From IMG/VR virus record IMGVR_UViG_3300037882_001770, positions 186,001 to 250,000 of that record: a stretch of DNA of 64,000 nt; one strand, 5' to 3'. This document shows positions 1,025 through 23,300 of the stretch, in pieces. The number at the start of each line of letters is the position of its first letter. The stretch's first letter is position 1. A program made the translations under genes and the position numbers. Below the pieces are notes generated by a model. That model was not told the origin of the DNA. It did no database searches and saw nothing but the letters and a program-made list of their open reading frames with translations.

Positions 1025-2335
1025 TTATAGATCAACACCGATGTGTTTATACAAGCGGGCTAATTCTTCTGGAGTTCTAACAGAAGTAACTATGGAATCC
1101 ATAGTGGTTTTAAATTCTGGATTTTGTTGTTTTTCTTTGGTGATTTGTTGCAGATATTTTGCAGTTTTGTTTTGATTCATAATTGACATGGCCTGCTGTA
1201 AATTTTGTCTATATTCGTTCACAATACTATTGTGCCAGCGGTCTGAAAAAAACAATTCTTTATTATATTCGGTAATAATTCTAGCCTGAGACATTTTGTT
1301 ATCACGTTGTTCTGGAGTCCAATTTGAAATGTATTTCATAAGCTCAGCAATCTGTAACAACCGTTCAGCTGGATCTTCTACTAGATCATAACTTTCGTCC
1401 CAGATATCACCAAATGTTTTAAATCCGTAGTTACGTAAGTATTCTAAACTACCGTGTGTGCCAGCCAGTATAAAAGGTTGAGCACACGCAATAGGCCTTA
1501 GTGTTTTTTCAGTCAAATGCAATCGACTGTCATCGAATAGTGTTTCAAGCACTACTTCAATGTCGGTAGATTCATAATCTTTAAGATCAAAATCTGCACT
1601 ATAATTGCTGGATGCAAGACTTGGCGGAAAGAAATTTTCTAAAACAGTTTGAGGTCTCCATTGAGTATTTTTAAAGATGTGCAAATCGTAGTGTAGGCCT
1701 AACTCGGGTTCAACGGGATTAACACTGGTTTTACAGTGTTCTTGTAAATTTAGATGTATTAATAATTCAGCAAAACGTAACCGGTATTCTCTTGTGCCAG
1801 ACCAAGCTCTATTGTAAATCAAAAAAGTTTTTTGGACCTGTTTTTTTTGGGCAACCTGTTTGGCATATCTAAACCAGTCCCTGGCAATAACCGCATGGCT
1901 CCACCAATACACACCCAAAAATCCGTTTTGCTCATAGTACTCAAGTTGTTTGCTGTTTTTTTCAGAATGACACAGCAACACCAAATCATAGCAGTGTAGT
2001 GGATAGCGTAGTATTGATCTAAGGTGCATTCCAGAAAACATTTTAGCAATAGAGTCGGACTTGTCGACCCAGGCCCCTAACCGTTGAGTTACATGATTTA
2101 ACGCCAAGCCTGAGATATTATAGGCTTCAAAATCCAGTGGCTCCTGATCGTGGCAAATCATGTTTGGCAAGATCATGTTGTCTATCCACGATTGTGATTG
2201 AGTTTTTAATGGCAATATGTCTTCTATTTTTTTTGAGCCATGGGGGTAAAAGCGATAAATTACTAAGTCTCCATCACAAATGTCAGTTGAAACGTTATCA
2301 ATATGATGATATAATCGATCTAAAGGAATGCTCAT
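1025..2335 (-). CDS. glycosyltransferase-like protein (GT10/GT-B-like)
   Basis: VVLETLF...LTEKTLRPI...PFILAG...LRNYGFKTF..WDESYD resembles the GT10 nucleotide-sugar-binding motif. Confidence 0.6.
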   Translation of the reverse strand: MSIPLDRLYHHIDNVSTDICDGDLVIYRFYPHGSKKIEDILPLKTQSQSWIDNMILPNMICHDQEPLDFEAYNISGLALNHVTQRLGAWVDKSDSIAKMFSGMHLRSILRYPLHCYDLVLLCHSEKNSKQLEYYEQNGFLGVYWWSHAVIARDWFRYAKQVAQKKQVQKTFLIYNRAWSGTREYRLRFAELLIHLNLQEHCKTSVNPVEPELGLHYDLHIFKNTQWRPQTVLENFFPPSLASSNYSADFDLKDYESTDIEVVLETLFDDSRLHLTEKTLRPIACAQPFILAGTHGSLEYLRNYGFKTFGDIWDESYDLVEDPAERLLQIAELMKYISNWTPEQRDNKMSQARIITEYNKELFFSDRWHNSIVNEYRQNLQQAMSIMNQNKTAKYLQQITKEKQQNPEFKTTMDSIVTSVRTPEELARLYKHIGVDL

Positions 2336-2338
2336 AGT

Positions 2339-3586
2339 ATGAAAAAAATAGGATTTATTGGGTTGGGTAAACTTGGCCTAGACTGCGCCGAAGTGTTTGC
2401 CGAACATTATGAAGTGCGCGGCTTTGATATTTACCCAAGAACCAGTGACCTGGTAAAAGTTTGTAGCATAGAAGAAACTGTCAATGAAAGTGAATGGATT
2501 TTTTTAGCAGTACCAACTCCTCACTGTGAAGGATACGATGGATCAGTTCCTAGCAGCCATATGGAACCCAAAGACTTTGGACGCGAAGCAGTATTAGCCG
2601 CAATTGACAGTATAAACAAACATGCAACCTCAAGCAAAAAAGTAGTGCTAATCAGCACAGTGTTGCCAGGTACTACTAGACATTATTTTGCTGGACGTCT
2701 TGATTCTGTACACAATTTTTTGTACAATCCTTACTTGATTGCTATGGGCAGTGTAAAGTGGGACATGGTCAATCCAGAAATGATCATGATCGGCACCGAA
2801 GATGGCAATCCCAATGCGCTTGCACAAGAGTTAATCGATCTATATACACCAATGATGAAAAATAGTCCAAGGTATGAAGTTGGTACTTGGGACGAGTGTG
2901 AAGCAATTAAAATTTTCTATAACACATTTATCAGTGCCAAAGTTGGTCTGGCCAATATGATTCAAGATTTTGCTATGAAGATTGGTAATATCAATGTGGA
3001 TGTGGTCACGGATGCATTGGCTCGTAGCACAATGCGTATTATGGGTCCCAAGTATATGACAGCTGGCATGGGCGATGCAGGTGCTTGCCATCCTAGAGAT
3101 AATATTGCTCTACGTTGGCTGGCACAAGAATATGACTTAGGGTACGACATGTTTGATACAATCATGCATGCTCGAGAAATTCAAGCACGTAATCTAGCTG
3201 AGTTTTTAGTAATACAAGCACAAAAAAATAACTTGCCAATAGTAATTCATGGCAAGGCTTATAAACCAGACGTGCCGTATTGTATTGGTAGTTATAGCAC
3301 CCTAATTGGACATTATGTTGAACAGGCAGGACACCGGGTGTCCTATGTTGATCCATTGGCCGACGACCAAACAAATGTAGTATCAAGTCTTGACACCCCG
3401 GCGGTAGTGTTGTTGGCACATAACCGACATGTAACCTATGGATATACTGGACAACCTCAACAAGACATTTTTTATTACGATATTAAGTCTGGCAGCGTTA
3501 TTGTTGATCCGTGGCGCTCAATTTCACAAGACACGAAAGGCATGACTGTTATACACTATGGAAACACACGTAATAACCAAATATAA
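2339..3586 (+). CDS. ugd: UDP-glucose/GDP-mannose dehydrogenase family protein
   Basis: Rossmann GLGKLG, AVPTP, STVLPGTT, catalytic Lys in EAIKIFYN, catalytic Cys in GACHPRD, AYKPD. Confidence 0.9.
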   Translation: MKKIGFIGLGKLGLDCAEVFAEHYEVRGFDIYPRTSDLVKVCSIEETVNESEWIFLAVPTPHCEGYDGSVPSSHMEPKDFGREAVLAAIDSINKHATSSKKVVLISTVLPGTTRHYFAGRLDSVHNFLYNPYLIAMGSVKWDMVNPEMIMIGTEDGNPNALAQELIDLYTPMMKNSPRYEVGTWDECEAIKIFYNTFISAKVGLANMIQDFAMKIGNINVDVVTDALARSTMRIMGPKYMTAGMGDAGACHPRDNIALRWLAQEYDLGYDMFDTIMHAREIQARNLAEFLVIQAQKNNLPIVIHGKAYKPDVPYCIGSYSTLIGHYVEQAGHRVSYVDPLADDQTNVVSSLDTPAVVLLAHNRHVTYGYTGQPQQDIFYYDIKSGSVIVDPWRSISQDTKGMTVIHYGNTRNNQI

Positions 3587-4076
3587 TCTAGTAAAATTCT
3601 GGGACGATGAATACAAACACCTGGAGTACATCAATGAGCCGTTTAACGATCCGGTAAATCTAGCCTTGTGGACCGGCCAGGGATACACTACACAGTTCAC
3701 CGGCGACATGTGTGACATGCGTAGCCAACAGCCTAGATGGAATGAGCAATTTATATCTATTTTTTCAGCTCTTGGCTGGCAAAATATTGGAACCAGTTAC
3801 TATCGAATGGGCACTGGTACGGTGTTGCCTGTACACGGTGATCTATACACAAAGTACATTGAACTGTATAACCTTCAAGGTCAAGAGAACCGTATACGCA
3901 GAGCCGTGGTATTCTTAGAAGATTGGGCCAGCGGCCATTACTTCGAAGGCATGGGGCAAGCTATGACAAATTGGAAAGCTGGCACTGTGATCGAATGGAC
4001 TTACGATACTCCTCACATGGCAGCCAACATAGGACTTACTCCTAGATATACCTTACAAATTACAGGGCATGTATGA
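3558..4076 (+). CDS. 2OG-Fe(II) oxygenase/cupin-like protein
   Basis: LPVHGD (HxD) ... PHMAANIG..PRYTLQITG double-stranded beta-helix signature. Confidence 0.75.
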   Translation: METHVITKYNLVKFWDDEYKHLEYINEPFNDPVNLALWTGQGYTTQFTGDMCDMRSQQPRWNEQFISIFSALGWQNIGTSYYRMGTGTVLPVHGDLYTKYIELYNLQGQENRIRRAVVFLEDWASGHYFEGMGQAMTNWKAGTVIEWTYDTPHMAANIGLTPRYTLQITGHV

Positions 4077-4996
4077 TATATTCTGTCAATGAGTGGGACC
4101 CATTGGAAAAAATCATAGTAGGCACTGCTAGTCATGCCAACTGGCCCATGACTGACCCAGTTTTTGCCGAAGAAGCAAAGAATTCGTTGTGGAAAGAAAC
4201 ACCAGCACCCAGCGGTCCTGTGCCACAGTTTATCATTGATGAAGCCAATAGAGAACTAGATATTTTGTCAGAGACCCTGTTGCGGTATGGTGCAATAGTG
4301 TATAGGCCTCGCCCCATGGACTTTGTTGAGAACAAAGGCATGTACAATTATTGCCCTAGAGATCGATTATTGGTCGCCGGAGACACCTTGATTGATTGTA
4401 ATATGATGTATCCTTGCCGTAATCAAGAAATCAAAAACTATACTAAATTAATAAGCGAAGCGCGAAACGTATTGACCATGCCAAGAGATCAAGGCATGAT
4501 TTTAGATGCTGCTAATATTTGTCGATTGGGCGACACTTGGTTGTTTTTAGAAAGTGCCAGTGGCAATCGTGCTGCATATGAATGGTTGTGTCATAAGTTT
4601 CCCAACATCACAATTGAACTATGCAATTTTTATGCAGGCGTACATATTGATTCAACTATTACTCCGCTACGTGAAGGCTTGGTAATGCTTAATGCCAGTC
4701 GTGTAACTGAAGAAAACTGTCCCAAGGTATTGCAAGATTGGGAAAAGATCTGGGTAACCGAAGACATGATTGTGGCACAAAACTTTTATCAGTATCCGTA
4801 TGCAAGCAAGTGGATTGCTATGAATCTATTGGTGCTGGACCCAGAAACTGTTATAATTGATGCTGCCCAAACCAAGTTAATTGCTATATTAAAGTCTAAA
4901 GGGATTGATAGTATCCCGTTGACCTTGAGCCACAGCCGCACTTTGGGTGGTGGCTTTCATTGTGTTACTTTAGACACACGGAGAAAACATGCTTGA
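4073..4996 (+). CDS. amidinotransferase (glycine/inosamine-phosphate amidinotransferase family)
   Basis: NEWDPLE.IIVG, CPRD, LDAAN, HIDST, GGGFHCVT (Cys-His-Asp triad). Confidence 0.9.
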   Translation: MIYSVNEWDPLEKIIVGTASHANWPMTDPVFAEEAKNSLWKETPAPSGPVPQFIIDEANRELDILSETLLRYGAIVYRPRPMDFVENKGMYNYCPRDRLLVAGDTLIDCNMMYPCRNQEIKNYTKLISEARNVLTMPRDQGMILDAANICRLGDTWLFLESASGNRAAYEWLCHKFPNITIELCNFYAGVHIDSTITPLREGLVMLNASRVTEENCPKVLQDWEKIWVTEDMIVAQNFYQYPYASKWIAMNLLVLDPETVIIDAAQTKLIAILKSKGIDSIPLTLSHSRTLGGGFHCVTLDTRRKHA

Positions 4997-6266
4997 TACA
5001 AATGCTGTACAACAGCTAATTGAACAACAGATAAACAAAACAGTCAACGAGCAAATCAAGGAAGTGCTGGCAGCCAAAGACTGGATGGAGTCACTCGAAA
5101 ACAAAATTATTAATTATACCAAGGATCGTATTGTAAGCAAATTTGCAAACTCGTCGGCCTTGCCTGAAATTGTTGAAGCAGTTAAAAGCAGTGTGAGTGA
5201 GTTGTTTGCATCGGGCCAAATTCCGGGTATCGAACAATATGTAAATGACACTCAAATTCAATATTCAATTGACCAAGCAGTTGAGCAGTTGATACAAGGT
5301 GCAATTGAGCAGTTAGGACGTGATCCAATCTGGTTGGCAAGAATTGAACACCTGATTAACCAAGCAGTGGTTCAACGAACTGTTGCTGGGCTAGGAGCAA
5401 TTGATATTACCAGTGTTATTCATCAACGTATTGACGAAAATATAAAAAACGCCCGATATAATTTATTGACTAATTTTTCTAGTCTAGGTATTAATGATCA
5501 AGCCACCAGTTGTCAGTTTACTGTAATGGATGACACTACAGTGGTTGAAAATAAACTAACAGCTAGAGAATTAGATGTAGTAGGGTCTGCCCGGATTAAA
5601 GATCTAGCAATCACAGGCTCGATTAACACTGATAACCGAGCCTGGACAGATCTAGCCGATGTTATTTCAGTCAAAACATTGGATAAAATTAATACCGAGT
5701 GGCAAAACTCTCTAGTTGCACAAGTGGTTGAACAAATTGAAATTAATGGAGTCTCGTTTGACCAAGTCAGAGTTGGCGACACCTTATTAGTTGACGGCAA
5801 CATATTATCTTCGAAGATCACCGAATCAGCTATACAAGCACTTGGCACTTTACGCACCTTATCAGTCAAGGGCGAAACACACCTCAATGAAACTGTTAGT
5901 GTGTTGCGTGGACGATTGGGTATCAACACTCAAGAACCAGAATCTGCACTCAGTATCTGGGACGAAGAAGTTTCATTGGTCTTGGGCAAGCACAAGTTAA
6001 AACAGGCTTATATTGGTACTAATAGAGATCAAGGCCTAGTTCTTGGAGTTAATAGATTGGCACAATTAGAAATTAGCACTGATGGACTAACTACAATTAA
6101 AAAGTTGCGAGTAGGACTGCATAAGATAGGGCATGACACACAAGTTCCAGGGTATGTGGGCACACGCGGCGACATTGTGTTTAATTCCAATCCTGGCCCA
6201 GATCGAGTATTTGCTTGGATATGCTTGGGCTCATACAACTGGCAAGTATTAAAGAGCGCAGAATGA
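4989..6266 (+). CDS. putative virion/tail-associated protein
   Basis: helical N-half; GRLGINTQEP and GTRGDIVFNSNP..AWIC motifs of the type seen in fibre/spike proteins. Confidence 0.5.
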   Translation: MLDTNAVQQLIEQQINKTVNEQIKEVLAAKDWMESLENKIINYTKDRIVSKFANSSALPEIVEAVKSSVSELFASGQIPGIEQYVNDTQIQYSIDQAVEQLIQGAIEQLGRDPIWLARIEHLINQAVVQRTVAGLGAIDITSVIHQRIDENIKNARYNLLTNFSSLGINDQATSCQFTVMDDTTVVENKLTARELDVVGSARIKDLAITGSINTDNRAWTDLADVISVKTLDKINTEWQNSLVAQVVEQIEINGVSFDQVRVGDTLLVDGNILSSKITESAIQALGTLRTLSVKGETHLNETVSVLRGRLGINTQEPESALSIWDEEVSLVLGKHKLKQAYIGTNRDQGLVLGVNRLAQLEISTDGLTTIKKLRVGLHKIGHDTQVPGYVGTRGDIVFNSNPGPDRVFAWICLGSYNWQVLKSAE

Positions 6267-6820
6267 ACATCAACTGGGTATTAGCAAATCAAGTAGTGGT
6301 TGACCCACTATACAATATTGATGAGATGAAAAGCATTGGTAGTTTTTGGGGCGGCTGGCAGACCTGGAGATCATGTCAAACCGACAATGTGATTTGCCAT
6401 GATTTACAAAAAGCACAAGACCTGGTCAAAAGAAATTTTCATACCCTGTGTAATCTCCACGTGCCTTCGTCGTCGTTTGTTGCATTGGATCGGCCTGACA
6501 GAGTACGTTTATATGAAGGTGAATTCAAACACGAAGTTTACAACAAAGAAGAATTAGTGGCCATGCATTTGGCTGCAACCACCAGCGATATAATTTTGCT
6601 ATTGGGATTCAATTGGGAAACTCCCAAAGATACCGGCGATCGACTACAAAATCATTATGACCACAACTATTTTGGGCTAACAAAAGAAGTCATAAAAAAT
6701 CACCCACTGGTACAGTGGGTGTTGGTTGATCACATCGCCGACGTAACTGTTGATTTTAAAACTTTGCCCAATTTAACTCGTGAAAGTTTAACTGGTGTTT
6801 TGAGTTTGTTAAAATCTTAA
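6263..6820 (+). CDS. hypothetical protein (possibly degenerate glycosyltransferase/Maf-like)
   Basis: ATGA-coupled start at 6263; VICHD and A...IILLLGF motifs. Confidence 0.55.
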   Translation: MNINWVLANQVVVDPLYNIDEMKSIGSFWGGWQTWRSCQTDNVICHDLQKAQDLVKRNFHTLCNLHVPSSSFVALDRPDRVRLYEGEFKHEVYNKEELVAMHLAATTSDIILLLGFNWETPKDTGDRLQNHYDHNYFGLTKEVIKNHPLVQWVLVDHIADVTVDFKTLPNLTRESLTGVLSLLKS

Positions 6821-6821
6821 A

Positions 6822-7094
6822 TTATTCTGGCGCTGGTTCACCGGCCACTACATTTTCAATAAGCACAGCAGATGGTGGCGTAGCAAGTGCATAAATCCAG
6901 GCTTCCCAAGCTTCAGCATTGGGCACGCTGTCGTACCAGTTGCGATAAATTATCACGTCGTCGCCGACAAATTCGCGGTATGGAACACCGTCGGTTTTGC
7001 CTTCGGCTGTAAGTATATCGATTTGAGCCTTGCATTCGGCTTGCACTGCCTCATAAGCTGTAAGAGTCCAAGTAGTTTTGGTTCTAATAGTCAT
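6822..7094 (-). CDS. hypothetical protein
   Basis: AGGAAGG RBS and TATAAATA late promoter at about 7121-7128 on the minus strand. Confidence 0.65.
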   Translation of the reverse strand: MTIRTKTTWTLTAYEAVQAECKAQIDILTAEGKTDGVPYREFVGDDVIIYRNWYDSVPNAEAWEAWIYALATPPSAVLIENVVAGEPAPE

Positions 7095-7179
7095 TGTAAA
7101 TCCTTCCTGATTTGATAACATTATTTATACCTAGTTTAGAATAGTTGACAATATAAGGACTTGGTTGTATAATACTTGT

Positions 7180-8214
7180 ATGAATACACTCAAACGCATA
7201 GGTTTTTGTTGCAAATGGCTAAATGATCCGTCTGAATGTGGCGGCATGAAGGTCAATGCCAAAGACCGTGATCTAAACGGGCGTAGCACTACCATGCGTT
7301 GGTTGCGTGAGCACCCAGCTGAAGCCGAACAACGCCAATGGGACATCATGAATCATAATACTAGTGCAGCGGTCAAGCTGATTGAGCGGGTGGCTACCCT
7401 GCCAGCTAATCGCAGAATGGTACGCTTGGGTAGTGAGATGTTGCAGGGTTATACCGAAAAAGACTGGATTGTGTGGTGGCAACAGAAGGATGTACAGGCA
7501 CATTTGGAACGTATATTTGCACCCATAGGCGAAACAGCACGTAGACTAGATGTGCGACTCAGTTTTCATCCAGGGCAATTTTGTGTGCTGGCATCAGAGA
7601 ATCCCGGCATTGTTGAACGATCAATACAGGAGTTTGAATATCATGCGGATATGGCCAGATGGATGGGCTATGGCAAATCCTTTCAGGATTTTAAAATCAA
7701 CGTACACATCTCGGGTAAACAAGGTCCCGAAGGCCTCCGACGCACCTACGGTAAACTCTCACCCGAAGCCCGCAGTTGTATTACAATTGAAAACGAAGAA
7801 AATTCATGGGGATTAGATGATTGCCTTACCATTAGCGATATTGTTCCTATTGTGCTTGACGTACACCATTATTGGATACGCGAAGGGGCATACATTGATG
7901 CCGCTAGTGATCGCGTTAAACGAGTGGTGGATAGTTGGCGTGGTGTACGTCCTGCTATGCACTACAGCGTATCTCGCGAAGATATTCTAATAGGACATGA
8001 CAGTCAAGTAGCTCCTGAATATGCTACCTTGCTAGAGGCCGGTCACAAAAAACAAAAGTTACGGGCACACTCAGACTTTTATTGGAACCAAGCCACTACA
8101 GATTGGGCCTTGACGTTCTGGGAACAGTTTGACATACAGTGCGAATCAAAGGGCAAGAACTTAGCTAGCGAGCAAGTGTACAATCGTGCTGTAGAATTGG
8201 GATTAGTAACATAG
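7180..8214 (+). CDS. uvsE: UV-damage endonuclease UvsE/UVDE
   Basis: RIGFCC, RLGSE, RLSFHPGQF.VL.S, NVH, IENEE, LDVHH, HYS, RAHSD, ESKGK; sigma70 promoter TTGACA 7145 / TATAAT 7168. Confidence 0.92.
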   Translation: MNTLKRIGFCCKWLNDPSECGGMKVNAKDRDLNGRSTTMRWLREHPAEAEQRQWDIMNHNTSAAVKLIERVATLPANRRMVRLGSEMLQGYTEKDWIVWWQQKDVQAHLERIFAPIGETARRLDVRLSFHPGQFCVLASENPGIVERSIQEFEYHADMARWMGYGKSFQDFKINVHISGKQGPEGLRRTYGKLSPEARSCITIENEENSWGLDDCLTISDIVPIVLDVHHYWIREGAYIDAASDRVKRVVDSWRGVRPAMHYSVSREDILIGHDSQVAPEYATLLEAGHKKQKLRAHSDFYWNQATTDWALTFWEQFDIQCESKGKNLASEQVYNRAVELGLVT

Positions 8215-9071: not shown

Positions 9072-9200
9072 ATGAAAATCGTAAAATCAATTTTATCCGC
9101 AGTTTGGACATTCTTATGTGCTTGTGGGCAGGCTAGGTATGCCGCAGAACTGGCACGCAATGGTAAATGGGCCGAAGCACAGGCTGTCTACAAAAACTAA
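9072..9200 (+). CDS. 42-aa hypothetical protein (not in ORF track)
   Basis: AAGGA RBS; MKIVKSILSAVWTFLCACGQARYAAELARNGKWAEAQAVYKN; TAATG-coupled to GNAT gene. Confidence 0.65.
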   Translation: MKIVKSILSAVWTFLCACGQARYAAELARNGKWAEAQAVYKN

Positions 9201-9745
9201 TGATCTCCACAATGTTTCTTCCCCGGGGAGAATACAGCATGTACGGGGATTGGCTGTCACGCCAAGACCCCGAAACCCTAAAAACCTATTTTGGAGTCAC
9301 AACAACACCAGGATTTATTAAATCCTTGGTGGATCGCATTGCTTTTAATCCCGGCAAACACGAATTTTTAATTGCACTAAATGATTGTCGTTGGGTGGGC
9401 ACCCTGCATATGGCTCTGCACTTGAACACAACCATTGAGTTTGGATTGATTGTTGATCAGAGACATCGCGGACAAGGTATTGCAGATCGTCTCATGGATG
9501 AAGCAGTGACCTGGGCACAAAATCGTAGGTACAAACGATTGTATCTACACTGTTTGAGTTGGAATCAGCCGATCAAACACCTGTGCAAAAAATATGGTCT
9601 AGAAATACGTAACCGAGACGGGTCAGGTGAAGTTGATGTAGAATTACCACCGCCTAGCATGATTAGTGTAGGCAAAGAGTTTGCCACCATGAATCGCAAC
9701 ATTTTTACCAAACTATTAGAAACAAGCTGGGATACTGCTAAGTAA
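9200..9745 (+). CDS. GNAT family acetyltransferase
   Basis: EFGLIVDQRHRGQGIADRLM acetyl-CoA motif; N.PIKHLCKKYG. Confidence 0.85.
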   Translation: MISTMFLPRGEYSMYGDWLSRQDPETLKTYFGVTTTPGFIKSLVDRIAFNPGKHEFLIALNDCRWVGTLHMALHLNTTIEFGLIVDQRHRGQGIADRLMDEAVTWAQNRRYKRLYLHCLSWNQPIKHLCKKYGLEIRNRDGSGEVDVELPPPSMISVGKEFATMNRNIFTKLLETSWDTAK

Positions 9746-9748
9746 AGT

Positions 9749-10453
9749 ATGACTGAATTAATCTATACCTTGGTAATGGTTCAAATTACCATAGCATGTG
9801 TTACTTTGTATTTGCATCGTGGTCAAGCGCATCGTGGTGTGACTTTTCATCCTGTGATAGAACATGCTATGCGTTTTTGGCTATGGCTAACCACAGGCAT
9901 GGTTACACGTCAGTGGGTAGCTATACACAGAAAACATCATCAACGTAGCGATCAAGCAGGCGATCCTCACAGCCCGCAGGTCCACGGGATTTGGCGTGTG
10001 CTGTTTGGTGGTGCATTTTTGTATCATGCAGCCAGCAAAGACACAGAAATGGTTGCCCGGCTAAGTCACGGAACCCCGGATGACTGGGTTGAGCGGAACG
10101 TATATGCAGCGCACAGCAGACTGGGTATAATGATCATGCTGTCCATAGATCTTGTGGCGTTTGGCTGGTGGGGGTTCTTGGTTTGGGGCATACAAATGAT
10201 CTGGGTACCTGTTTGGGCAGCCGGAGTCATTAACGGCCTGGCACACTGGTGGGGCTACCGCAACACCAAAACCGCAGATACCAGCACAAATTTGTGGCCC
10301 ATTGCAATTTGGATTGGCGGCGAAGAATTGCACAATAACCACCACGCAGATGGTGCCAACGCAAAATTCAGTCAACGTTGGTGGGAATTTGATATTGGGT
10401 GGTTTTACATAACCGTACTTAAAACTTTTAATTTGGCAAAATTGAGAGTATAA
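9749..10453 (+). CDS. fatty-acid (delta-9 acyl) desaturase
   Basis: His boxes HRGQAH, HRKHH, HNNHH; GDPHSP; WWEFDIGW. Confidence 0.93.
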   Translation: MTELIYTLVMVQITIACVTLYLHRGQAHRGVTFHPVIEHAMRFWLWLTTGMVTRQWVAIHRKHHQRSDQAGDPHSPQVHGIWRVLFGGAFLYHAASKDTEMVARLSHGTPDDWVERNVYAAHSRLGIMIMLSIDLVAFGWWGFLVWGIQMIWVPVWAAGVINGLAHWWGYRNTKTADTSTNLWPIAIWIGGEELHNNHHADGANAKFSQRWWEFDIGWFYITVLKTFNLAKLRV

Positions 10454-15000: not shown

Positions 15001-15597
15001 ATGCCAAATTTAGTACCCATTGTAGTAGAACAAACCAGCAAAGGCGAACGCAGTTACGATATATATAGTAGACTGCTGCGTGATCGTATTGTAATGCTAG
15101 ATACAGACGTAAACGAGCATACTGCCAGTTTGATAGTGGCTCAGTTGCTGTTTTTAGAAGCAGAAGATCCAGAGCGCGATATTATTTTTTACATCAACAG
15201 CCCAGGTGGCGTAGTCACGGCAGGTATGGCAATTTACGACACTATGAACTTTATTCGCCCGGATGTAAGCACAGTGGTCATGGGCCAGGCATGTAGCATG
15301 GGAAGTTGTTTAGCTCAGGCTGGCGCCGCAGGTAAACGATTTATTTTGCCAAATGCACGTCATATGATTCACCAACCTTCGGGCGGTGCCAGAGGACAAG
15401 CAACAGATATTCAGATTCAAGCACAAGAAATACTCAAAATGAAAAAATACTTAACAGAGATCTATGTCAAGCACAACACTGCTGGCAAAACCTTTGAGCA
15501 GTTGACCGCAGACATGGAACGCGACAACTTTATGAGTGCTGAAGAAGCAGTGGCCTATGGCTTGGCTGATCAGATTATAACTCGACGCGATGCCTAA
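15001..15597 (+). CDS. clpP: ATP-dependent Clp protease proteolytic subunit
   Basis: [46 protein letters not shown]. Confidence 0.97.
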
Positions 15598-16897
15598 TCA
15601 GCAGGTATTTTGCAACACCCCGTGGTATGAATTACATATCTATTGGGACGGTGGCTTTGGTATTTGTTGTCAAGAAAGCCACCGATTGTATAAAGATTCC
15701 ACACAGTACAACATTGCCAACATGAGCATTATGGAATGGTTTAATAGCCAACCTGTGCGAAAATTCAGAACAGACATACTGGGTGACAGTAAAATATCTG
15801 AGTGCCAGCGTTGTTATATTGAAGAACGACACGGCGGCAACAGTCGTAGATTAAAAAGTAATTTAAAAAGCGTTATCTTTACACGTCAGGCCTTTGATGA
15901 AAGTTTTAAACAAAGTCCAGGATATCCGATATTTTCAACCAACGACCAAACTCAAGGCTACACCACGACCCATCCGATTGATCTGCATGTTGACCTAGGA
16001 AACTACTGTAACTTGGCCTGTAAAATGTGCCATGCACAGGCCAGTAGCACAATTGCAAGCCAAGAAGTAAAATGGGGCATTGCCGAAAGCAAACAGTATC
16101 TTGGTACCGACTGGACCAGAAATCCGCAGGTATGGCAATCGTTTAAACAGCAGTTGTTGGAAATACCAAATTTAAAGAATATACACTTCATGGGCGGCGA
16201 AACTCTACTGACCAATCAATTTGAAGATCTAGTGGACTGGTTGACCGAACATCGACGATTTGAAGTGTGTTTTAGTTTTGTGACCAATGGTACAGTGTTT
16301 AAACCAACACTAATCGACAAACTTAAAAAGTTTCAGCGAGTGGGCATAGAAATCAGTATAGAATCTGTAGATGAACACAATGCTTATCAACGTCAGGGCA
16401 CCGATACTGCTCTGGTACTAGCCAACATCAAACAATATCAAACACACTGCAACAACACCAGCATCACCGTGGCATTACGTCCAGCACCTAGCGCATTGAC
16501 CATTGGCTACTATGTGGGATTATTGCAGTTTGCACTAGACAATCAGTTGGTGGTCAAAAGCAATCTGTGTTACGAGCCAAGATTCTTAAATGCAGAAATA
16601 TTACCTGACAAAACAAAATTGCTTTACCAGTCATATTATCAAGAATTTTTAACACAATTTGCCGATGTACAGGCCAATATCGATTACAATGCCAGCGACT
16701 TGAATAACTATCGATTAATCATCAAAGAACATGCAGAAATGTGCCTGGCCATATTGCAAACCCCGGAGCCCAACGATTATCAACATCAAATTGAATGTCT
16801 GGTCAATCACTGTAGAAAATGGGATGATATTTACGGATACGATGCACGAGTATTATATCCTGAATTAACTGAAATATTGGATCTTTATGGCTATTGA
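15590..16897 (+). CDS. radical SAM protein with N-terminal SPASM/Twitch-like domain
   Basis: [16 protein letters not shown]; N-terminal C..PW...CC...C..C. Confidence 0.9.
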
Positions 16898-19304: not shown

Positions 19305-19678
19305 AAGCATTTCAAGAGACAACCGAATGGGACACAGATTTTGTGATGCCTAACCATGTTTATTTTTTAAGCGACTCAAAAGATAAAATGTATGGCTATG
19401 TACAGGCTGGTACCGGTCTTGTACAGGCCATAAGCAAGCCGTATCGGTTCAAAGCTGGCGGCCGCAAGTTTAAAGAAGTAGAAAATCGTTGGAACTTTAG
19501 AATTGCTGAAGATGAAACTGAAGCGGAAGCTACAGGTAAACAGTATCAGGTTCCGGGTAGCAAGGGTGCAGTCTATATAGTGACCGATGATTTGGGTACT
19601 TGGTCATGTACCTGTCCGGCATCAAAGTGGCAAAAAGGCGAGTGTAAGCATATCAAGAGCTTAAACACCAAATCTTGA
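19301..19678 (+). CDS. SWIM zinc-finger protein
   Basis: V.GSKG..Y.V......WSCTCP.......CKHI. Confidence 0.8.
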   Translation: MKAFQETTEWDTDFVMPNHVYFLSDSKDKMYGYVQAGTGLVQAISKPYRFKAGGRKFKEVENRWNFRIAEDETEAEATGKQYQVPGSKGAVYIVTDDLGTWSCTCPASKWQKGECKHIKSLNTKS

Positions 19679-20347
19679 TCTCAAAAAGTAATAATTTCTC
19701 TGTATCTGTTCTTGATTAAGCTGATCAGTATATAAAAGCATGTTGGCCACGTAGCCGAATGGTTGTCCTGGAATTTGACCTGTATAGTCGTGAGCATTAC
19801 CAGCCACTGTTCGAACTGTGGTTCCTACCTGTTCACCGTTGATGTAAAATGTTTGTCCTGAGCTGTTGCCGGTTACTGCCCACTGAACCCAGACGTTGGC
19901 TAGAGCACTTACATCGTTGTATCCTGAGGGATAAAATGCACTTGTACCATTGTCATACATGCCCAGGCGATTAGAACCAATTTCAATTATGATAGCGTGG
20001 TCATCTGGATTGGATCTAAACAAGGTTCTCCAACTGGTAGTACTAGCGATCATTCTTGCCCACACAATATAAGTAAATCCTGTTGTAGGAAGAGTAGGAG
20101 TGGCACTAGCGGCTCGAATGTTATAGGTGTTGGTACAATCCCAACACTTAACTCCCGACAATACTGTATAGGCAGCAGCATTGGATAAATTTTGTGTGCG
20201 ACCGTTCCCTGACAGATCTGTAATTGTAGTGCCTGATCCGGGATAACTGGCAACATTGTCGGCGTCAATCCATATGGCCATATTGTCGGCTGTAATACCA
20301 GCATCGAATATTTGTGTTCCGCGGAGTGTTACACCTGATATGATCAT
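19661..20347 (-). CDS. LamG/concanavalin A-like lectin domain protein (fibre-associated)
   Basis: DA.N..SYPGSGTT..DLSGNG; YINGEQV; L...QIQRNY....RFGV; ATGA-coupled to fibre gene. Confidence 0.8.
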   Translation of the reverse strand: MIISGVTLRGTQIFDAGITADNMAIWIDADNVASYPGSGTTITDLSGNGRTQNLSNAAAYTVLSGVKCWDCTNTYNIRAASATPTLPTTGFTYIVWARMIASTTSWRTLFRSNPDDHAIIIEIGSNRLGMYDNGTSAFYPSGYNDVSALANVWVQWAVTGNSSGQTFYINGEQVGTTVRTVAGNAHDYTGQIPGQPFGYVANMLLYTDQLNQEQIQRNYYFLRSRFGV

Positions 20348-23300
20348 ACCAATCTTTCGATAGTGATCATATTGTTGTTGTAGTCGGTACCAACGATCAA
20401 CGATATTCTCCAAGAAATAGCATTGGCTGTGTCCATGATTACCCAGGTGTCTGTGGCTCCTGCTGTAGCAAAATTGATGTTAGCGTCTAGATACGTAGGA
20501 GTCGTAGTAATGCTCACCGGTGTTTGCCCGGTGATAGTTGTGCTACTGACACTGTTTTCAACCCGAGTGTCGCTGCCAAACACGCTGTATGTTCCTGTTA
20601 CAGTTGACAGTTGTAAGCTCACGTTACCGGTGGCTGGTATTCTGGCTTTTAGATTGTCCAAGGTGACATCAACTCCACGATTGACCAAACCGCTGGCTTT
20701 GAACTGTAGTTCACCGCCTACACCCGCAGGTGCTTTGGACAAATCGATGTACACGCCTCTAGTATTACCACCGCTTTCAAAAAATCTAAGTTTATCAACA
20801 TATTGATCAACAACAACAGTGTTACCCGACAATGTGCTGTTGGCTGCTTGAGTAAAAGAAATTTCTCCGCCTTCATTACCGCTACTGCCTGTTGGCAATG
20901 TTAGCATACCGGTGTTGTCAAACACATAAGAATAACTACCAGCAACCAATGTGACATTTGGTTGTGTGCCTATCACATTGCCAGTGATATTGATGTTGCC
21001 AACAAAGTTAGCGGCTGTAATGTTACCAGTGGCAGTGATAGAATTGCCCACTGCGATGTTTTCTACAGTGAGTCGATTCTGTGCAGGATTGTAGGTGATA
21101 TTGGCTGTGCCATCAGCAGCCTTGATGCCAAGATTGCCGGTGTTGGCCACCAGCAGGGCTGGCACATATTCTTGATTTAACAACACGCTCGACACTGTAA
21201 CAGTGTTGGCCAAGGTAGCTTCGGACACAGCACCTGTGACATTGGCACCGATGATGGAAGTCAATGTGGAACCATTACCGACGAAGTAGTTGCCGGTGAT
21301 GTTGCCAAGCACGCTGAAGGGAACGTTTTGTACCTTTACGAGCACGTTACTCACTAGAAGATTGTTGTTGCCACCGGCACCAATGTTTACAGTATTGCCA
21401 GGACTCGGTGCAAAGATATTTGTAACCGTTAGGTTTGTAGTGTCAACATTGAGTATATCTCCTGTTGTTCCTTGAATGTTACCGACAAAATTAGCGGCTG
21501 TGATGTTGCCAGAGAATGTAGCACCTGCTCCATTAATGTTGCCTGACGCTGTGATATTGCCTGTGGCGCCCACAGTCGAAATTGAGCTAAATCCTGACAG
21601 ACTCGGAGCAGGACTTGCACCTGATCCTACCAAACTACCAGTAAGAACAATATTGCCTGTGGCAATCAAGTTGCTAGCAGTGACATTGCCAATAGCACTG
21701 ATATCGCCGGGAGCAGAAAGATCTCCGCTGGTGTCAAACGTCCAGCTCTCTGTGTTGGCAGTTATGACCGCATTAGATTGTGTGAATATCAATCCAAAGT
21801 CCGGATTCAAAGAAATGTTTCCATAGTCAGCATTGATATTTCTAGCTGTTACAGCCAAGCCTTCAATGGACTGGGTTGTGGTAATGTTGCCCGGAGCAGT
21901 CAAGTTGCCAGTGGTGTCAAATGTCCAGCCTGTGTTTCCAGCATCAGTGTATACGGATACATTGGAGTTAGCATAGATCTCAGCATCACCAGTGTTGTTC
22001 AAAAACAAGCCAGTAGCATCACTGGCACCAGCACTGAATCTCACTCCAGTGTTGCCCGCGGGCAGTATTTGGCTATTGCCCGGCAATGTAAGGGTGCCAT
22101 TGTTATCAAACAACCATGACTGAGTGTTGGCAGTGATAGCAACGTTGCCGGCTGATGGTCCTACAATATCATTGGTATAGACATTGCCTGATACGTTGAG
22201 ATTGATAGGAACTGAAAGATCTCCAAACTGACTGAAAGTAAAAGTATACGTGGCAGTGCCAGTGTTGGAAGTATTGATAGTGAAGTCGTTGTCTAGGCCG
22301 CCGTATATGGATGCTTGACTTCTAGGGAAAATCAAGGTACCGGTGTTGTCAAACACCCATTCATAAGTAGGAGCACCGATGGATAATGACCCGGCACCGA
22401 TCTCCACGTTGCCGGCATCGTTGTGCAGGCGTGTGTCGGTAACGTTGGCTGTGTCATTGGTAGGCAGTTGCAAGAATGCCCAACCTTCTGGGTCAGGGCT
22501 GATGTTGATCAGTGTGTCTGTGGCCCCATTGGCTATACTTATTTCTGTACCATAGATTGCAAGGTTACCAATGTTGGCTTCGCCGGTGTTGCTGGTTACA
22601 ACAACATCATCACCGTTGACTGTGAGTATATTGCCAGCAGTTAAACTTATTGGTACATTGTTCATGTAAATGGTAGCGTTTGATATGTACAAATCGTTCC
22701 ATTGATTCGTACTATTACCCAAACTATATGTGTTTGAAGTAGCCGGAATAATGTTTCCGGCCCAACCCACTTGTCCATATGCTACTGCATTGGCATTGGC
22801 ATAGTTTGAAACCCCAGTAAGTTGACTACCATCACCAATGAAATATCCGCCTGGACTTGCTACAATATTGGCAAAACTAGTGATTTCACCAACAGCATTT
22901 ATTTCTCCACTTATTCCAATATTTCCGCCAGCAATATTTCCAGAATATGTTGGCAAATATACAGCAACATTGCTATTACCGTACATACCAGTGAGCTGAC
23001 TACCATTACCTATAAAGTATGCGGCTGTAATATTTCCCGACGCACCGACAGTTTCGGACAAGATATCACCGTGGACCTCTAGGCCATCTTCGATGTTTAC
23101 AAAAGTAGAATCATCTGAACTGATATTGTTAACTATGAGATTGTTGACTGCAATATCTGGAGTTTCTAGGCCAATGTTCATTGTCCATGTGTTTGAACTT
23201 GCACTGTACAGCATTATGGCTATGTTATCATTGGCGCCCACTGTGATACCTGACCCATTGGCCGCATTAGCGGTGCTGGCTGTGTTGGCCAGCTGTATAG

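What the first reader, a model, noticed from the sequence alone, without database searches (positions are those of the whole stretch)
1025..6820. Sugar-modification cluster with an amidinotransferase next to a putative virion gene
Seen: a GT10-like gene divergent from an operon of nucleotide-sugar dehydrogenase, 2OG-Fe(II) oxygenase, amidinotransferase with intact Cys/His/Asp, a fibre-like protein and a possible degenerate GT, with overlapping starts and stops. Known: this amidinotransferase family guanidinylates amines (glycine in creatine synthesis, inosamine-phosphate in streptomycin synthesis). Inference: the phage may make a guanidino/uronate-containing glycan for the virion, the host surface or DNA.
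Basis: partly seen in the sequence, partly recalled or inferred. Interest (0 to 1): 0.65.

Follow-up and report, generated by a model that had tools for sequence, protein, structure and literature searches.

The report
Phage amidinotransferase–oxygenase–glycosyltransferase sugar-tailoring cassette
A large aquatic T4-like phage carries a conserved gene set (an arginine-dependent amidinotransferase, a small oxygenase-like protein and two glycosyltransferase-like proteins) that most likely builds a sugar carrying a guanidino group, a chemistry not yet shown for any virus.

Summary
ORF4 is a StrB1-type amidinotransferase (E 4.8e-63 to PDB 1bwd) with the Asp/His/Cys triad aligned. ORF2 is an NDP-sugar 6-dehydrogenase. 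ORF3 carries a 2OG/Fe(II) oxygenase motif. ORF1 folds as a GT-B glycosyltransferase. ORF6 has a Maf/sialyltransferase-like fold.

Co-conservation is partial. In about 36 related phage contigs, ORF3 (35/36, always adjacent to ORF4), ORF1 (33/36) and ORF6 (32/35) travel with the amidinotransferase. The dehydrogenase (13/36) and the 'fibre-like' ORF5 (21/35) are optional.

New here: in other lineages the ORF3 domain is fused to ORF1-like transferases, again next to an amidinotransferase. The same genome also has a paralogous transferase–transferase–amidinotransferase set beside a sugar 4,6-dehydratase and 4-aminotransferase.

Best reading: a sugar-tailoring cassette that guanidinylates an amino sugar or aminocyclitol and transfers it to an unknown acceptor.

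- DNA is disfavoured: no hydroxymethylase, DpdA or QueC was found.
- The virion link is weak: ORF5 is optional, unannotated and over 100 kb from the structural genes.
- Chemistry and acceptor are untested.

The parts
1025..2335 (-). ORF1, 436 aa: GT-B fold glycosyltransferase, transcribed away from the operon
   Evidence: AF2 model pLDDT 81.5. All top 50 Foldseek PDB hits are GT-B glycosyltransferases. VIA-align: T4 beta-glucosyltransferase 1c3j Z 12.0 (277 aligned), POGLUT2/1 Z 10.7/10.3, alpha-1,3-fucosyltransferase 5zoi Z 9.8. Invariant E264, T275-E276-K277. No Pfam hit. Present in 33/36 related loci. Two paralogs in the same genome sit next to a second amidinotransferase.
2339..3586 (+). 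ORF2, 415 aa: NDP-sugar 6-dehydrogenase (UDP-glucose/GDP-mannose dehydrogenase family); accessory, not core
   Evidence: PF00984 6e-15, PF03721 6e-14, phrog_9148 5e-87. TIGR03026 133.5 bits, below its 189.8 cut-off. PDB UDP-glucose dehydrogenases 6e-16, with GACHPRD aligned to the catalytic GSCFPKD. Present in 13/36 related loci.
3558..4076 (+). ORF3, 172 aa: small 2OG/Fe(II) oxygenase-like protein, the constant upstream partner of the amidinotransferase
   Evidence: Invariant H93-x-D95, H153, R163-x-T165 in 13 homologues. Sub-threshold PF05118 hits; an Atlas cluster at 0.98 has PF05118 in 21% of members. 30% identical to S-SCSM2R_308, annotated as a 2OG-Fe(II) oxygenase. Adjacent to ORF4 in 35/36 loci. 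Fused to ORF1-like transferases in other lineages.
4073..4996 (+). ORF4, 307 aa: L-arginine-dependent amidinotransferase of the StrB1 type
   Evidence: PDB 1bwd StrB1 E 4.8e-63; AGAT about 3e-29; HsvA 2e-25; SxtG 5e-25. D145/H191/C297 align with StrB1 D179/H227/C332. R96-D97, D145, H191, D193, H296-C297 are invariant across 13 phage homologues, including CP220. Monophyletic phage clade; nearest cellular relatives are Streptomyces StrB1-type proteins at about 40% identity.
4989..6266 (+). ORF5, 425 aa: optional protein of unknown function with a fibre-type sequence motif
   Evidence: No Pfam, PHROG or PDB family hit. 1268 metagenomic homologues, all hypothetical. Long (about 425 aa) and short (about 347 aa) forms exist; invariant R309-x-G311-x-N313-T314-x-x-P317-x-x-A320-L321. 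The motif weakly matches the region before the MYRF chaperone domain (E 0.46) and a 352-aa ORF in this phage's structural region. Present in 21/35 loci.
6263..6820 (+).
   Evidence: AF2 pLDDT 91.9. VIA-align: Maf flagellin glycosyltransferase 5mu5 Z 10.7 (166 of 185 aligned), SteA Z 9.2, Cst-I sialyltransferase 2p56 Z 8.1, archaeal HPPK (MptE) Z 7.9. Foldseek gave nothing significant. No Pfam hit. Present in 32/35 loci of the window lineage, absent from other lineages.
2287..2315 (+). Sigma-70-like promoter match (TTGAAA-17-TATAAT, with TG extension) 24 nt upstream of ORF2, inside the ORF1 coding sequence
   Evidence: 11 of 12 consensus positions. It lies in conserved ORF1 coding sequence, so its conservation says nothing. 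This is a consensus match only.

Best explanation
The locus is a phage accessory cassette for tailoring and transferring a sugar.

Its conserved core has three enzymes: a StrB1-type amidinotransferase (ORF4), a small 2OG/Fe(II) oxygenase-like protein (ORF3) and a GT-B glycosyltransferase (ORF1). This lineage adds a Maf/sialyltransferase-like protein (ORF6). Some members also carry an NDP-sugar 6-dehydrogenase (ORF2) and ORF5.

Proposed mechanism:
1. ORF4 takes the amidino group of L-arginine onto Cys297, releasing ornithine.
2. ORF4 passes the amidino group to a primary amine on a sugar-like acceptor. The most plausible acceptor is an NDP-4-amino-4,6-dideoxyhexose or an aminocyclitol phosphate. 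The phage can make such an amine itself with its 4,6-dehydratase and DegT aminotransferase. The product carries a guanidino group.
3. ORF3 hydroxylates the same intermediate or the acceptor.
4. ORF1, and ORF6 where present, transfer sugars onto a cytoplasmic acceptor: a lipid-linked envelope glycan, or a phage or host protein.

Shown: the gene identities or folds, the catalytic residues of ORF4, the co-conservation, the gene fusions and the paralogous module. Inferred: the acceptor, the product, the order of steps and the biological target.
For: - ORF4 matches StrB1 at E 4.8e-63, about 30 orders of magnitude better than glycine amidinotransferase, and the triad is aligned. The catalytic and arginine-binding residues are invariant in 13 phage homologues.
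- ORF3 is immediately upstream of ORF4 in 35/36 loci of the lineage. ORF1 is present in 33/36 and ORF6 in 32/35.
- The ORF3-like and amidinotransferase pairing also occurs in the L044-46 lineage and in cyanophage S-SCSM2R.
- Fusion evidence: eight representative proteins of about 520-595 aa join an ORF3-like domain to the conserved C-terminal domain of ORF1. One 1018-aa protein is GT-ORF3-GT (hhalign 99.3%).
- In the contigs of two such fusions, an amidinotransferase gene sits directly upstream.
- The same genome holds a second set at C1:10-18 kb: an NDP-hexose 4,6-dehydratase-like SDR, a DegT 4-aminotransferase, two ORF1 paralogs and an amidinotransferase paralog.
- Short DegT-like genes, GT17, a methyltransferase or a carbamoyltransferase flank the module in other lineages. 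Glycosyltransferases flank it in S-SCSM2R and CP220.
- ORF1 has a GT-B fold. The Atlas holds ORF1-like folds fused to a GDP-mannose-dehydratase/epimerase domain.
- ORF6 has a Maf/sialyltransferase-like fold.
Against: - No enzyme activity, product or acceptor has been observed. No natural guanidino-hexose glycan is known to me.
- The ORF3 fold was not tested and its Pfam hits are below threshold.
- ORF1 and ORF6 match known transferases by predicted fold only, with middling Z-scores (12.0 and 10.7) and no sequence-family hit.
- The window's cassette has no aminotransferase next to it. The nearest are about 175 kb and 97 kb away in the genome.
- The paralogous amidinotransferase appears to have Asn where the catalytic Asp should be, in a gapped alignment.
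- StrB1's natural acceptor is a cyclitol phosphate, not a nucleotide sugar.
- No CMP-sugar synthetase or NeuB was found to feed a sialyltransferase-like ORF6.
Confidence: 0.5

Rival explanations
1. Protein-directed modification. ORF3 hydroxylates a residue of a phage or host protein, and ORF1 and ORF6 O-glycosylate it, as lysyl hydroxylase-glycosyltransferase enzymes do for collagen. The amidinotransferase then modifies the attached amino sugar or a lysine side chain. ORF5, where present, could be a fibre-like substrate or virion component.
For: - Oxygenase-glycosyltransferase fusions mirror the bifunctional hydroxylase/glycosyltransferase L230 of mimivirus (PMC9546862, PMC5802723, listed; domain organisation from my own knowledge).
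- The only Pfam family that ORF3 relatives touch is PF05118, a family that includes protein Asp/Asn hydroxylases.
- Protein O-glucosyltransferases are among ORF1's best fold matches (Z 10.7 and 10.3).
- ORF6's best match, Maf, glycosylates flagellin.
- In cyanophage S-SCSM2R a second amidinotransferase (ORF266) and a nearby 2OG oxygenase (ORF269) were detected in purified virions (PMC12801897; locus).
- ORF5 carries a fibre-type motif.
Against: - No acceptor protein has been identified.
- ORF5 is absent from 14 of 35 loci.
- The cassette is more than 100 kb from the structural genes and has no T4 late promoter upstream.
- The authors of the S-SCSM2R paper regard the virion detection as probable carry-over.
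- Amidino transfer to protein lysine has no precedent known to me.
Confidence: 0.2
2. Small-molecule biosynthesis. The cassette makes a diffusible guanidino glycoside or aminocyclitol (aminoglycoside-like), or another arginine-derived guanidino metabolite. It would serve as an auxiliary metabolic function or an antimicrobial, rather than decorating a macromolecule.
For: - The nearest cellular relatives of ORF4 are the StrB1-type enzymes of streptomycin-family clusters in Streptomyces, at about 40% identity.
- Recurrent neighbours are DegT/StrS-family aminotransferase-like genes, a dehydrogenase, glycosyltransferases and in one lineage a carbamoyltransferase. These echo aminoglycoside pathways (comparison from my own knowledge).
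- The S-SCSM2R authors list their homologue as an 'antibiotic synthesis gene' (PMC12801897).
Against: - No inositol-phosphate synthase, cyclitol kinase, exporter or resistance gene was seen in the cassette.
- None of the cellular homologues has ORF1-, ORF3- or ORF6-like neighbours.
- Two transferase-like proteins with rapidly diverging sequences (45-60% identity against 85-90% for ORF4) fit variable macromolecular acceptors better.
Confidence: 0.15
3. DNA hypermodification. ORF1 glycosylates modified bases in phage DNA, as the T4 glucosyltransferases do, and the amidinotransferase further decorates the adduct to block restriction.
For: - ORF1's best structural match is T4 beta-glucosyltransferase (Z 12.0), and T4 alpha-glucosyltransferase also scores (Z 9.5).
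- The phage is T4-like.
- Campylobacter phage CP220 carries a distant homologue of the amidinotransferase. I recall from my own knowledge that CP220 has modified DNA; I did not check this here.
Against: - No thymidylate-synthase-like dCMP/dUMP hydroxymethylase (PF00303), TGT/DpdA (PF01702) or QueC (PF06508) was found in the 89%-complete genome.
- The Z of 12.0 is only about 1.3 above protein O-glucosyltransferases.
- A Maf-like protein and a sugar dehydrogenase are not parts of known DNA glycosylation systems.
Confidence: 0.07

Closest known systems
StrB1, L-arginine:inosamine-phosphate amidinotransferase of streptomycin biosynthesis (PDB 1bwd)
   Same: Clear sequence homology over the full length (E 4.8e-63). 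The aligned Asp-His-Cys triad, the CPRD and H-x-D motifs and the C-terminal GGGFHC motif are all present. The predicted chemistry is the same: arginine as amidino donor to a primary amine.
   Different: About 40% identity only. The window lineage lacks a roughly 25-35-residue segment that StrB1 and other phage homologues have just before the catalytic Asp. The gene context is entirely different: there are no ORF1-, ORF3- or ORF6-like neighbours in Streptomyces loci. The acceptor is unknown.
Amidinotransferase genes noted in Campylobacter phages CP220/CPt10 and cyanophage S-SCSM2R
   Same: Homologous pentein amidinotransferases in large myoviruses, embedded among glycosyltransferases and radical SAM or 2OG enzymes. 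They were noted in print but never characterised (PMC2853527, PMC12801897).
   Different: 23% (CP220) and 35% (S-SCSM2R) identity. CP220 has no ORF3 homologue. No earlier description of the conserved amidinotransferase/ORF3/GT-B triad or of the fusions turned up in my searches.
Virus-encoded glycan machineries (giant-virus fibril glycosylation; mycobacteriophage virion glycosylation; mimivirus L230 hydroxylase-glycosyltransferase)
   Same: A viral genome encodes its own sugar-nucleotide enzymes (4,6-dehydratase, DegT aminotransferase, GalE, C-methyltransferase) plus glycosyltransferases. An oxygenase is linked or fused to a glycosyltransferase.
   Different: No amidinotransferase is part of those systems, to my knowledge. 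The acceptor here is unknown. No homology to L230 was tested.
T4 alpha- and beta-glucosyltransferases (DNA hydroxymethylcytosine glucosylation)
   Same: Best structural neighbour of ORF1 (Z 12.0 and 9.5), in a T4-like phage.
   Different: The pathway that makes the hydroxymethylated base was not found. About 6-8% sequence identity.
Maf flagellin glycosyltransferases and bacterial sialyltransferases (DUF115 / GT42-type fold)
   Same: ORF6's predicted fold aligns over 166 of 185 residues with the Maf central domain (Z 10.7) and with Cst-I (Z 8.1).
   Different: ORF6 is a bare 185-aa domain with no Pfam hit. No CMP-sugar synthesis genes are in the genome. An archaeal pterin pyrophosphokinase of the same fold also matches (Z 7.9).

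Membership tests
Amidinotransferase (pentein superfamily, StrB1/AGAT type) - ORF4 | Significant full-length sequence similarity to solved amidinotransferases | tested here: met
   1bwd E 4.8e-63; AGAT 3e-29; HsvA 2e-25; SxtG 5e-25. Pfam gave no hit at E <= 0.01.
Amidinotransferase (pentein superfamily, StrB1/AGAT type) - ORF4 | Catalytic Cys-His-Asp triad | tested here: met
   C297, H191 and D145 align with StrB1 C332, H227 and D179 (the StrB1 residue roles are from my own knowledge). They are invariant in 13 phage homologues.
Amidinotransferase (pentein superfamily, StrB1/AGAT type) - ORF4 | Transfer, rather than hydrolysis, of the amidino group from arginine to an amine | not testable with these tools
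   Needs an enzyme assay. The weak NCBIfam hit to dimethylargininase (E 0.0013) reflects only the shared C-terminal motif.
UDP-glucose/GDP-mannose dehydrogenase family - ORF2 | NAD-binding and central domains with the catalytic Cys | tested here: met
   PF03721 and PF00984 above their cut-offs. GLGKLG is at the N-terminus. The Cys in GACHPRD aligns with GSCFPKD of 2y0d.
UDP-glucose/GDP-mannose dehydrogenase family - ORF2 | Assignment to a specific substrate (equivalog level) | tested here: not met
   TIGR03026 scores 133.5 against a 189.8 cut-off, and all equivalog models score far below their cut-offs.
2OG/Fe(II)-dependent oxygenase - ORF3 | H-x-D/E...H iron-binding triad and a basic residue that binds 2OG | tested here: met
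   H93-G-D95, H153 and R163-Y-T165 are invariant in 13 sequences down to 34% identity. The reading of the spacing is from my own knowledge of the family.
2OG/Fe(II)-dependent oxygenase - ORF3 | Family-level sequence match | tested here: inconclusive
   The window protein has no hit. PF05118 appears below threshold in 2/13 homologues (E 0.009), in 21% of one Atlas cluster, and in one distant representative (E 0.0027). A PDB profile search found nothing.
2OG/Fe(II)-dependent oxygenase - ORF3 | Double-stranded beta-helix fold | not tested
The Atlas holds no model.
Glycosyltransferase family 10 (fucosyltransferase) - ORF1 | Sequence match to PF00852 | tested here: not met
   No Pfam hit at E <= 0.01. 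The Atlas feature scores of 0.77-0.78 to GT10 clusters are in the chance range.
Glycosyltransferase family 10 (fucosyltransferase) - ORF1 | GT-B fold with a donor-binding E...TEK-type motif | tested here: met
   GT-B fold; GT10 structures score Z 8.6-9.8. Invariant E264 and T275-E276-K277. The likeness to the GT10 motif is recalled from memory and is only a lead.
T4-type DNA glucosyltransferase system - ORF1 | A phage pathway that makes hydroxymethylated pyrimidine as the acceptor | tested here: not met
   No PF00303 match in the 317 kb genome, which is estimated 89% complete.
Maf / sialyltransferase-like (DUF115) - ORF6 | Fold similarity across the domain | tested here: met
   5mu5 Z 10.7, rmsd 4.0, 166 of 185 aligned; 2p56 Z 8.1. 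Foldseek found nothing significant.
Maf / sialyltransferase-like (DUF115) - ORF6 | Sequence-family match, and a source of CMP-activated sugar | tested here: not met
   No Pfam hit. No PF02348 or PF03102 gene in the genome.
Phage tail fibre / virion protein - ORF5 | Homology to known structural proteins, or a position in the structural module | tested here: not met
   No Pfam, PHROG, PDB or isolate-phage match. It lies more than 100 kb from gp20 and gp23. Only a short motif is shared with a 352-aa ORF in the structural region (hhalign probability 14%).

The most novel reading that the evidence does not exclude
Aquatic jumbo phages use an arginine-dependent amidinotransferase, working with a dedicated oxygenase-glycosyltransferase pair, to make a guanidino sugar. 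Such a cationic sugar has not been described in natural glycans. The phages would install it on a virion protein or on the infected cell's envelope, for example to change surface charge, adsorption or resistance to superinfection. This would be a new class of viral glycan chemistry, spread across several phage lineages.
Probability: 0.3. Interest if true: 0.8.

Novelty: new variant of a known kind. Interest (0 to 1): 0.58.

Why it matters
Virus-encoded glycosylation is known, and phage amidinotransferase genes have been listed in annotations since 2010. None has been characterised, and they are usually filed as creatine or antibiotic genes.

This analysis shows the gene belongs to a recurrent three-part module: amidinotransferase, small oxygenase-like protein and GT-B transferase. 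The module is conserved, duplicated within one genome and fused in other lineages. It is abundant in aquatic metagenomes: 7,772 amidinotransferase homologues at E <= 1e-5 among the 8,000 candidates scored.

That gives a concrete target that can be expressed to look for a new sugar modification, a guanidino sugar. It would also correct the metabolic annotation of these genes in viral gene catalogues.

Tried and rejected
- Megablast of the locus, and tblastn of ORF1 and ORF5, against isolate phages found nothing.
- Pfam, PHROG, NCBIfam and PDB sequence searches of ORF1, ORF3, ORF5 and ORF6 gave no usable hits.
- The word search with the ORF3 profile returned only close unannotated relatives.
- PF05118 searched directly in the genome found nothing.
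- CP220's gene upstream of its amidinotransferase is not an ORF3 homologue.
- The GT beside S-SCSM2R's amidinotransferase is not ORF1-like.
- The two annotated 2OG oxygenases beside S-SCSM2R ORF266 are not detectably ORF3-like.
- The genes that follow the ORF3-GT fusions are not ORF6-like.
- The T4 late-promoter motif TATAAATA occurs once in the window, no more than chance, and not upstream of the operon.
- 7-Deazaguanine and hydroxymethyl-pyrimidine routes were not found.
- CMP-sugar genes were not found.
- The close 'bacterial' hits in MAGs (Haliscomenobacter, Terrimicrobiaceae, Bacteroidetes, Legionella bins) are syntenic phage contigs, not cellular homologues.

Full report
**Context.** The window is bases 186,001-250,000 of a single 317,493-bp viral contig, estimated 89% complete. 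The contig encodes a T4-type major capsid protein (PF07068, E 9e-99, at about 79.5 kb) and portal (PF07230, E 1e-104, at about 74.8 kb). It is therefore a jumbo T4-like myovirus. The finding lies more than 100 kb from the structural genes. No isolate phage matches it at the DNA level. Close relatives are on metagenomic contigs of 340-356 kb.

**Check of the observation.** The six ORFs are present as described.
- The start/stop overlaps are real: ATGA at 4073-4076, an 8-nt overlap at 4989-4996, ATGA at 6263-6266 and a 29-nt overlap between ORF2 and ORF3.
- ORF6 most likely starts at ATG 6263 rather than TTG 6215, as its homologues do.
- ORF1 (minus strand) and ORF2 (plus strand) begin 3 nt apart.
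- A sigma-70-like match (11 of 12 positions, TG-extended) sits 24 nt upstream of ORF2. The T4 late motif TATAAATA is not upstream of the operon.

**ORF4, the amidinotransferase.**
- It matches the solved inosamine-phosphate amidinotransferase StrB1 at E 4.8e-63. This is much better than glycine amidinotransferase (about 3e-29), HsvA or SxtG.
- In that alignment D145, H191 and C297 fall on StrB1 D179, H227 and C332. I know these as the catalytic triad from my own knowledge.
- These residues, with R96-D97, D193 and H296, are invariant in 13 phage homologues, down to the 23%-identical CP220 protein.
- The window lineage lacks a 25-35-residue segment before the catalytic Asp that StrB1 and the other phage lineages keep.
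- In a tree of 80 sequences the window lineage is one clade (support 100). The nearest cellular proteins are the StrB1-type enzymes of Streptomyces, at about 40% identity.

**ORF2.** It is a member of the UDP-glucose/GDP-mannose dehydrogenase family, with the Rossmann motif and the catalytic Cys. It scores below every substrate-specific model.

**ORF3.**
- No family hit for the window protein itself.
- H93-x-D95, H153 and R163-x-T165 are invariant across homologues down to 34% identity. This is the iron triad and 2OG-binding arginine pattern of 2OG oxygenases (my own knowledge).
- Sub-threshold hits to PF05118 (Asp/Asn beta-hydroxylase) recur in relatives.
- Its S-SCSM2R homologue is deposited as a 2OG-Fe(II) oxygenase.
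- I did not test its fold.

**ORF1.**
- It models with pLDDT 81.5.
- All top 50 Foldseek PDB hits are GT-B glycosyltransferases, though with weak E-values.
- The independent aligner ranks T4 beta-glucosyltransferase first (Z 12.0, 277 residues aligned). Protein O-glucosyltransferases (Z 10.7 and 10.3) and an alpha-1,3-fucosyltransferase (Z 9.8) follow.
- The invariant E264...T275-E276-K277 block resembles the GT10 donor motif as I recall it. PF00852 does not hit, so 'GT10-like' stays a resemblance, not a membership.

**ORF6.** It models with pLDDT 91.9. Its best match is the central domain of the Maf flagellin glycosyltransferase (Z 10.7, 166 of 185 residues). SteA, a Campylobacter sialyltransferase and an archaeal pterin pyrophosphokinase of the same fold come next.

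**ORF5.**
- It has 1268 metagenomic relatives, all unannotated, and no family or PDB match.
- Its invariant motif R-x-G-I-N-T-x-x-P-x-x-A-L weakly matches the region before the chaperone domain of MYRF (E 0.46).
- In this genome the motif recurs only in a 352-aa ORF inside the structural region.

**Co-conservation.** I fetched 43 IMG/VR contigs encoding relatives of ORF4, plus one from the assembly index. I mapped the window's proteins onto them. Among loci of the window lineage with at least 2 kb of flank:

| Gene | Present | Identity to the window protein |
|---|---|---|
| ORF4 | reference | 66-91%, with three loci (L040-L042) at 57% |
| ORF3 | 35/36, always directly upstream of ORF4 | 57-73% |
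| ORF1 | 33/36, divergent on the other strand | 26-61% (46-61% in most loci) |
| ORF6 | 32/35 | 33-54% |
| ORF2 (dehydrogenase) | 13/36 | not tabulated |
| ORF5 | 21/35 | not tabulated |

- ORF1 and ORF6 diverge much faster than ORF4 and ORF3.
- The dehydrogenase and ORF5 are therefore accessories.
- In a related 341 kb genome a SAM synthetase sits between ORF6 and UvdE instead.
- Five 'bacterial' MAG contigs with 57-87% identical ORF4 have the same gene order, so they are phage DNA.
- None of the true cellular homologues has ORF1-, ORF3- or ORF6-like neighbours.

**Evidence beyond the lineage.**
1. A more distant phage lineage (L044-46, ORF4 36-37% identical) has an ORF3-like gene, an ORF1-like gene, the amidinotransferase and the dehydrogenase together. 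A short DegT-like gene, a GT17 and a methyltransferase sit beside them.
2. Cyanophage S-SCSM2R has the ORF3-like/amidinotransferase pair inside a block of glycosyltransferases, a short DegT-like gene and a radical SAM gene. It also has a second amidinotransferase (hhalign 98.3%), which follows KdsB/KdsA and precedes two annotated 2OG oxygenases. That second enzyme and one of the oxygenases were detected in purified virions (PMC12801897).
3. An exhaustive profile search with ORF3 found 873 representatives. Eight proteins of 520-595 aa join an N-terminal ORF3-like domain to the conserved C-terminal domain of ORF1, and one 1018-aa protein has the order GT-ORF3-GT. In the contigs of two of these fusions an amidinotransferase gene lies immediately upstream. 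One of them also has a short DegT-like gene and a carbamoyltransferase nearby.
4. The window's own genome has, at 10-18 kb, an NDP-hexose 4,6-dehydratase-like SDR, a DegT aminotransferase nearest to 4-amino-4,6-dideoxyhexose transaminases, two ORF1 paralogs (about 30% identity) and an amidinotransferase paralog (25% identity; StrB1 2e-12).
5. A third sugar region at 278-296 kb has GalE, a short DegT-like gene, a sugar C-methyltransferase and an SDR.

**Interpretation.**
- The amidinotransferase, the ORF3-type oxygenase-like protein and the ORF1-type GT-B transferase form a functional module. This is shown by conserved adjacency in several lineages, by a paralogous set in one genome and by gene fusion.
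- Their company is nucleotide-sugar dehydratases, aminotransferases, dehydrogenases and other transferases. That places the module in sugar tailoring, not in creatine-type metabolism.
- The simplest chemistry is amidino transfer from arginine to the amine of an amino sugar or aminocyclitol, by analogy with StrB1, followed by glycosyl transfer. ORF3 would hydroxylate the intermediate or the acceptor.
- I give this about 0.5. Activity, product and acceptor are all inferred.

**Rivals.**
- Protein-directed (0.2): hydroxylation followed by O-glycosylation, supported by the fusion architecture, the PF05118 lead, the POGLUT and Maf fold matches, and the S-SCSM2R virion proteome.
- Soluble guanidino glycoside (0.15).
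- DNA hypermodification (0.07): favoured only by the T4 glucosyltransferase fold match. No thymidylate-synthase-like, DpdA or QueC gene was found.

**Comparison with what is known.**
- Phage amidinotransferase genes were noted for CP220/CPt10 in 2010 within interchangeable radical-SAM clusters (PMC2853527).
- S-SCSM2R's was noted in 2025 as an 'antibiotic synthesis gene' (PMC12801897).
- Ocean viral gene catalogues discuss the creatine pathway (PMC11360552).
- None reports a function, and I found no description of the conserved triad or of the fusions.
- I rate this a new variant of a known kind: virus-encoded glycan machinery with an unprecedented amidinotransferase arm.

**Limits.**
- The two structure jobs went to ORF1 and ORF6, so ORF3 and ORF5 have no fold test.
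- Complex prediction, sequencing-run search and the Atlas fold library were unavailable.
- The fold Z-scores for ORF1 and ORF6 are middling and show fold, not function.
- The genome is incomplete, so the absences are provisional.

Noticed in passing
outside the window: G000:C1:10434-17885 (locus L048:7434-14885): A second, paralogous cassette in the same genome. It holds an NDP-hexose 4,6-dehydratase-like SDR, a DegT 4-aminotransferase, a 734-aa unknown gene on the opposite strand, two ORF1-like transferases and a divergent amidinotransferase. A radical SAM/SPASM gene follows.
   Followed up: partly
outside the window: G000:C1:285739-295728 (locus L047:7739-17728): A third sugar region: GalE (above the NCBIfam cut-off), a 196-aa truncated-looking DegT-like protein, GTP cyclohydrolase I, a sugar C-methyltransferase (PF08484) and an SDR. 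Similar 195-200-aa DegT-like genes accompany the amidinotransferase in L044, L096 and S-SCSM2R. What such half-length DegT proteins do is unclear.
   Followed up: partly
window 15590-16897, 49471-50604, 61565-62773 (+): Three radical SAM proteins lie in the window. The first has its SPASM domain N-terminal to the radical SAM core, which is an unusual order. The Campylobacter phage amidinotransferase also sits among radical SAM genes.
   Followed up: no
window 19661-23724 (-): A 1126-aa protein with a weak beta-solenoid match (FapA) overlaps the end of a 250-aa protein with a concanavalin-A-like lectin domain. These are possible fibre or adhesin genes far from the structural module.
   Followed up: no
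window 7145-8214 (+): A UvdE UV-damage endonuclease (PF03851, 3e-31) is conserved directly downstream of the cassette in nearly all related loci. A perfect 12/12 sigma-70 consensus lies at 7145-7173, overlapping the listed TTG start at 7165, so the true start is probably later.
   Followed up: no
window 9167-10453 (+): A GNAT acetyltransferase and a fatty-acid-desaturase-like protein lie just beyond UvdE. Both are conserved in many related loci.
   Followed up: no
loci L003-L037, between ORF1 and ORF3 (about 40 nt): In relatives without the dehydrogenase, the short ORF1-ORF3 spacer holds a conserved TATTTA(C/A). On ORF1's strand this reads (G/T)TAAATA, 10-12 nt before its ATG. It may be a late-promoter-like element for ORF1. 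The window, where ORF2 fills the spacer, lacks it.
   Followed up: no
locus L003:1-4966 (related 341 kb genome): Immediately upstream of the cassette the relative encodes ClpX, ribosomal protein S21, GroES, GroEL, HSP20 and ClpS. This is an unusually rich chaperone/protease set for a phage. A 2025 paper describes aquatic jumbo 'moraphages' that all carry heat-shock genes and have predicted Bacteroidota hosts (PMC12619734). Whether this lineage is related was not tested.
   Followed up: no
loci L049-L053 (GTDB MAG contigs): Contigs binned into Legionella, Haliscomenobacter (two contigs), Terrimicrobiaceae and Bacteroidetes MAGs carry the phage cassette in phage gene order. They are probably mis-binned phage DNA, or at best a weak host hint toward Bacteroidota.
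   Followed up: partly
window 6822-7129 (-): A 99-aa ORF with no homologue in the related loci has the window's only TATAAATA directly against its start codon at 7122-7129.
   Followed up: no
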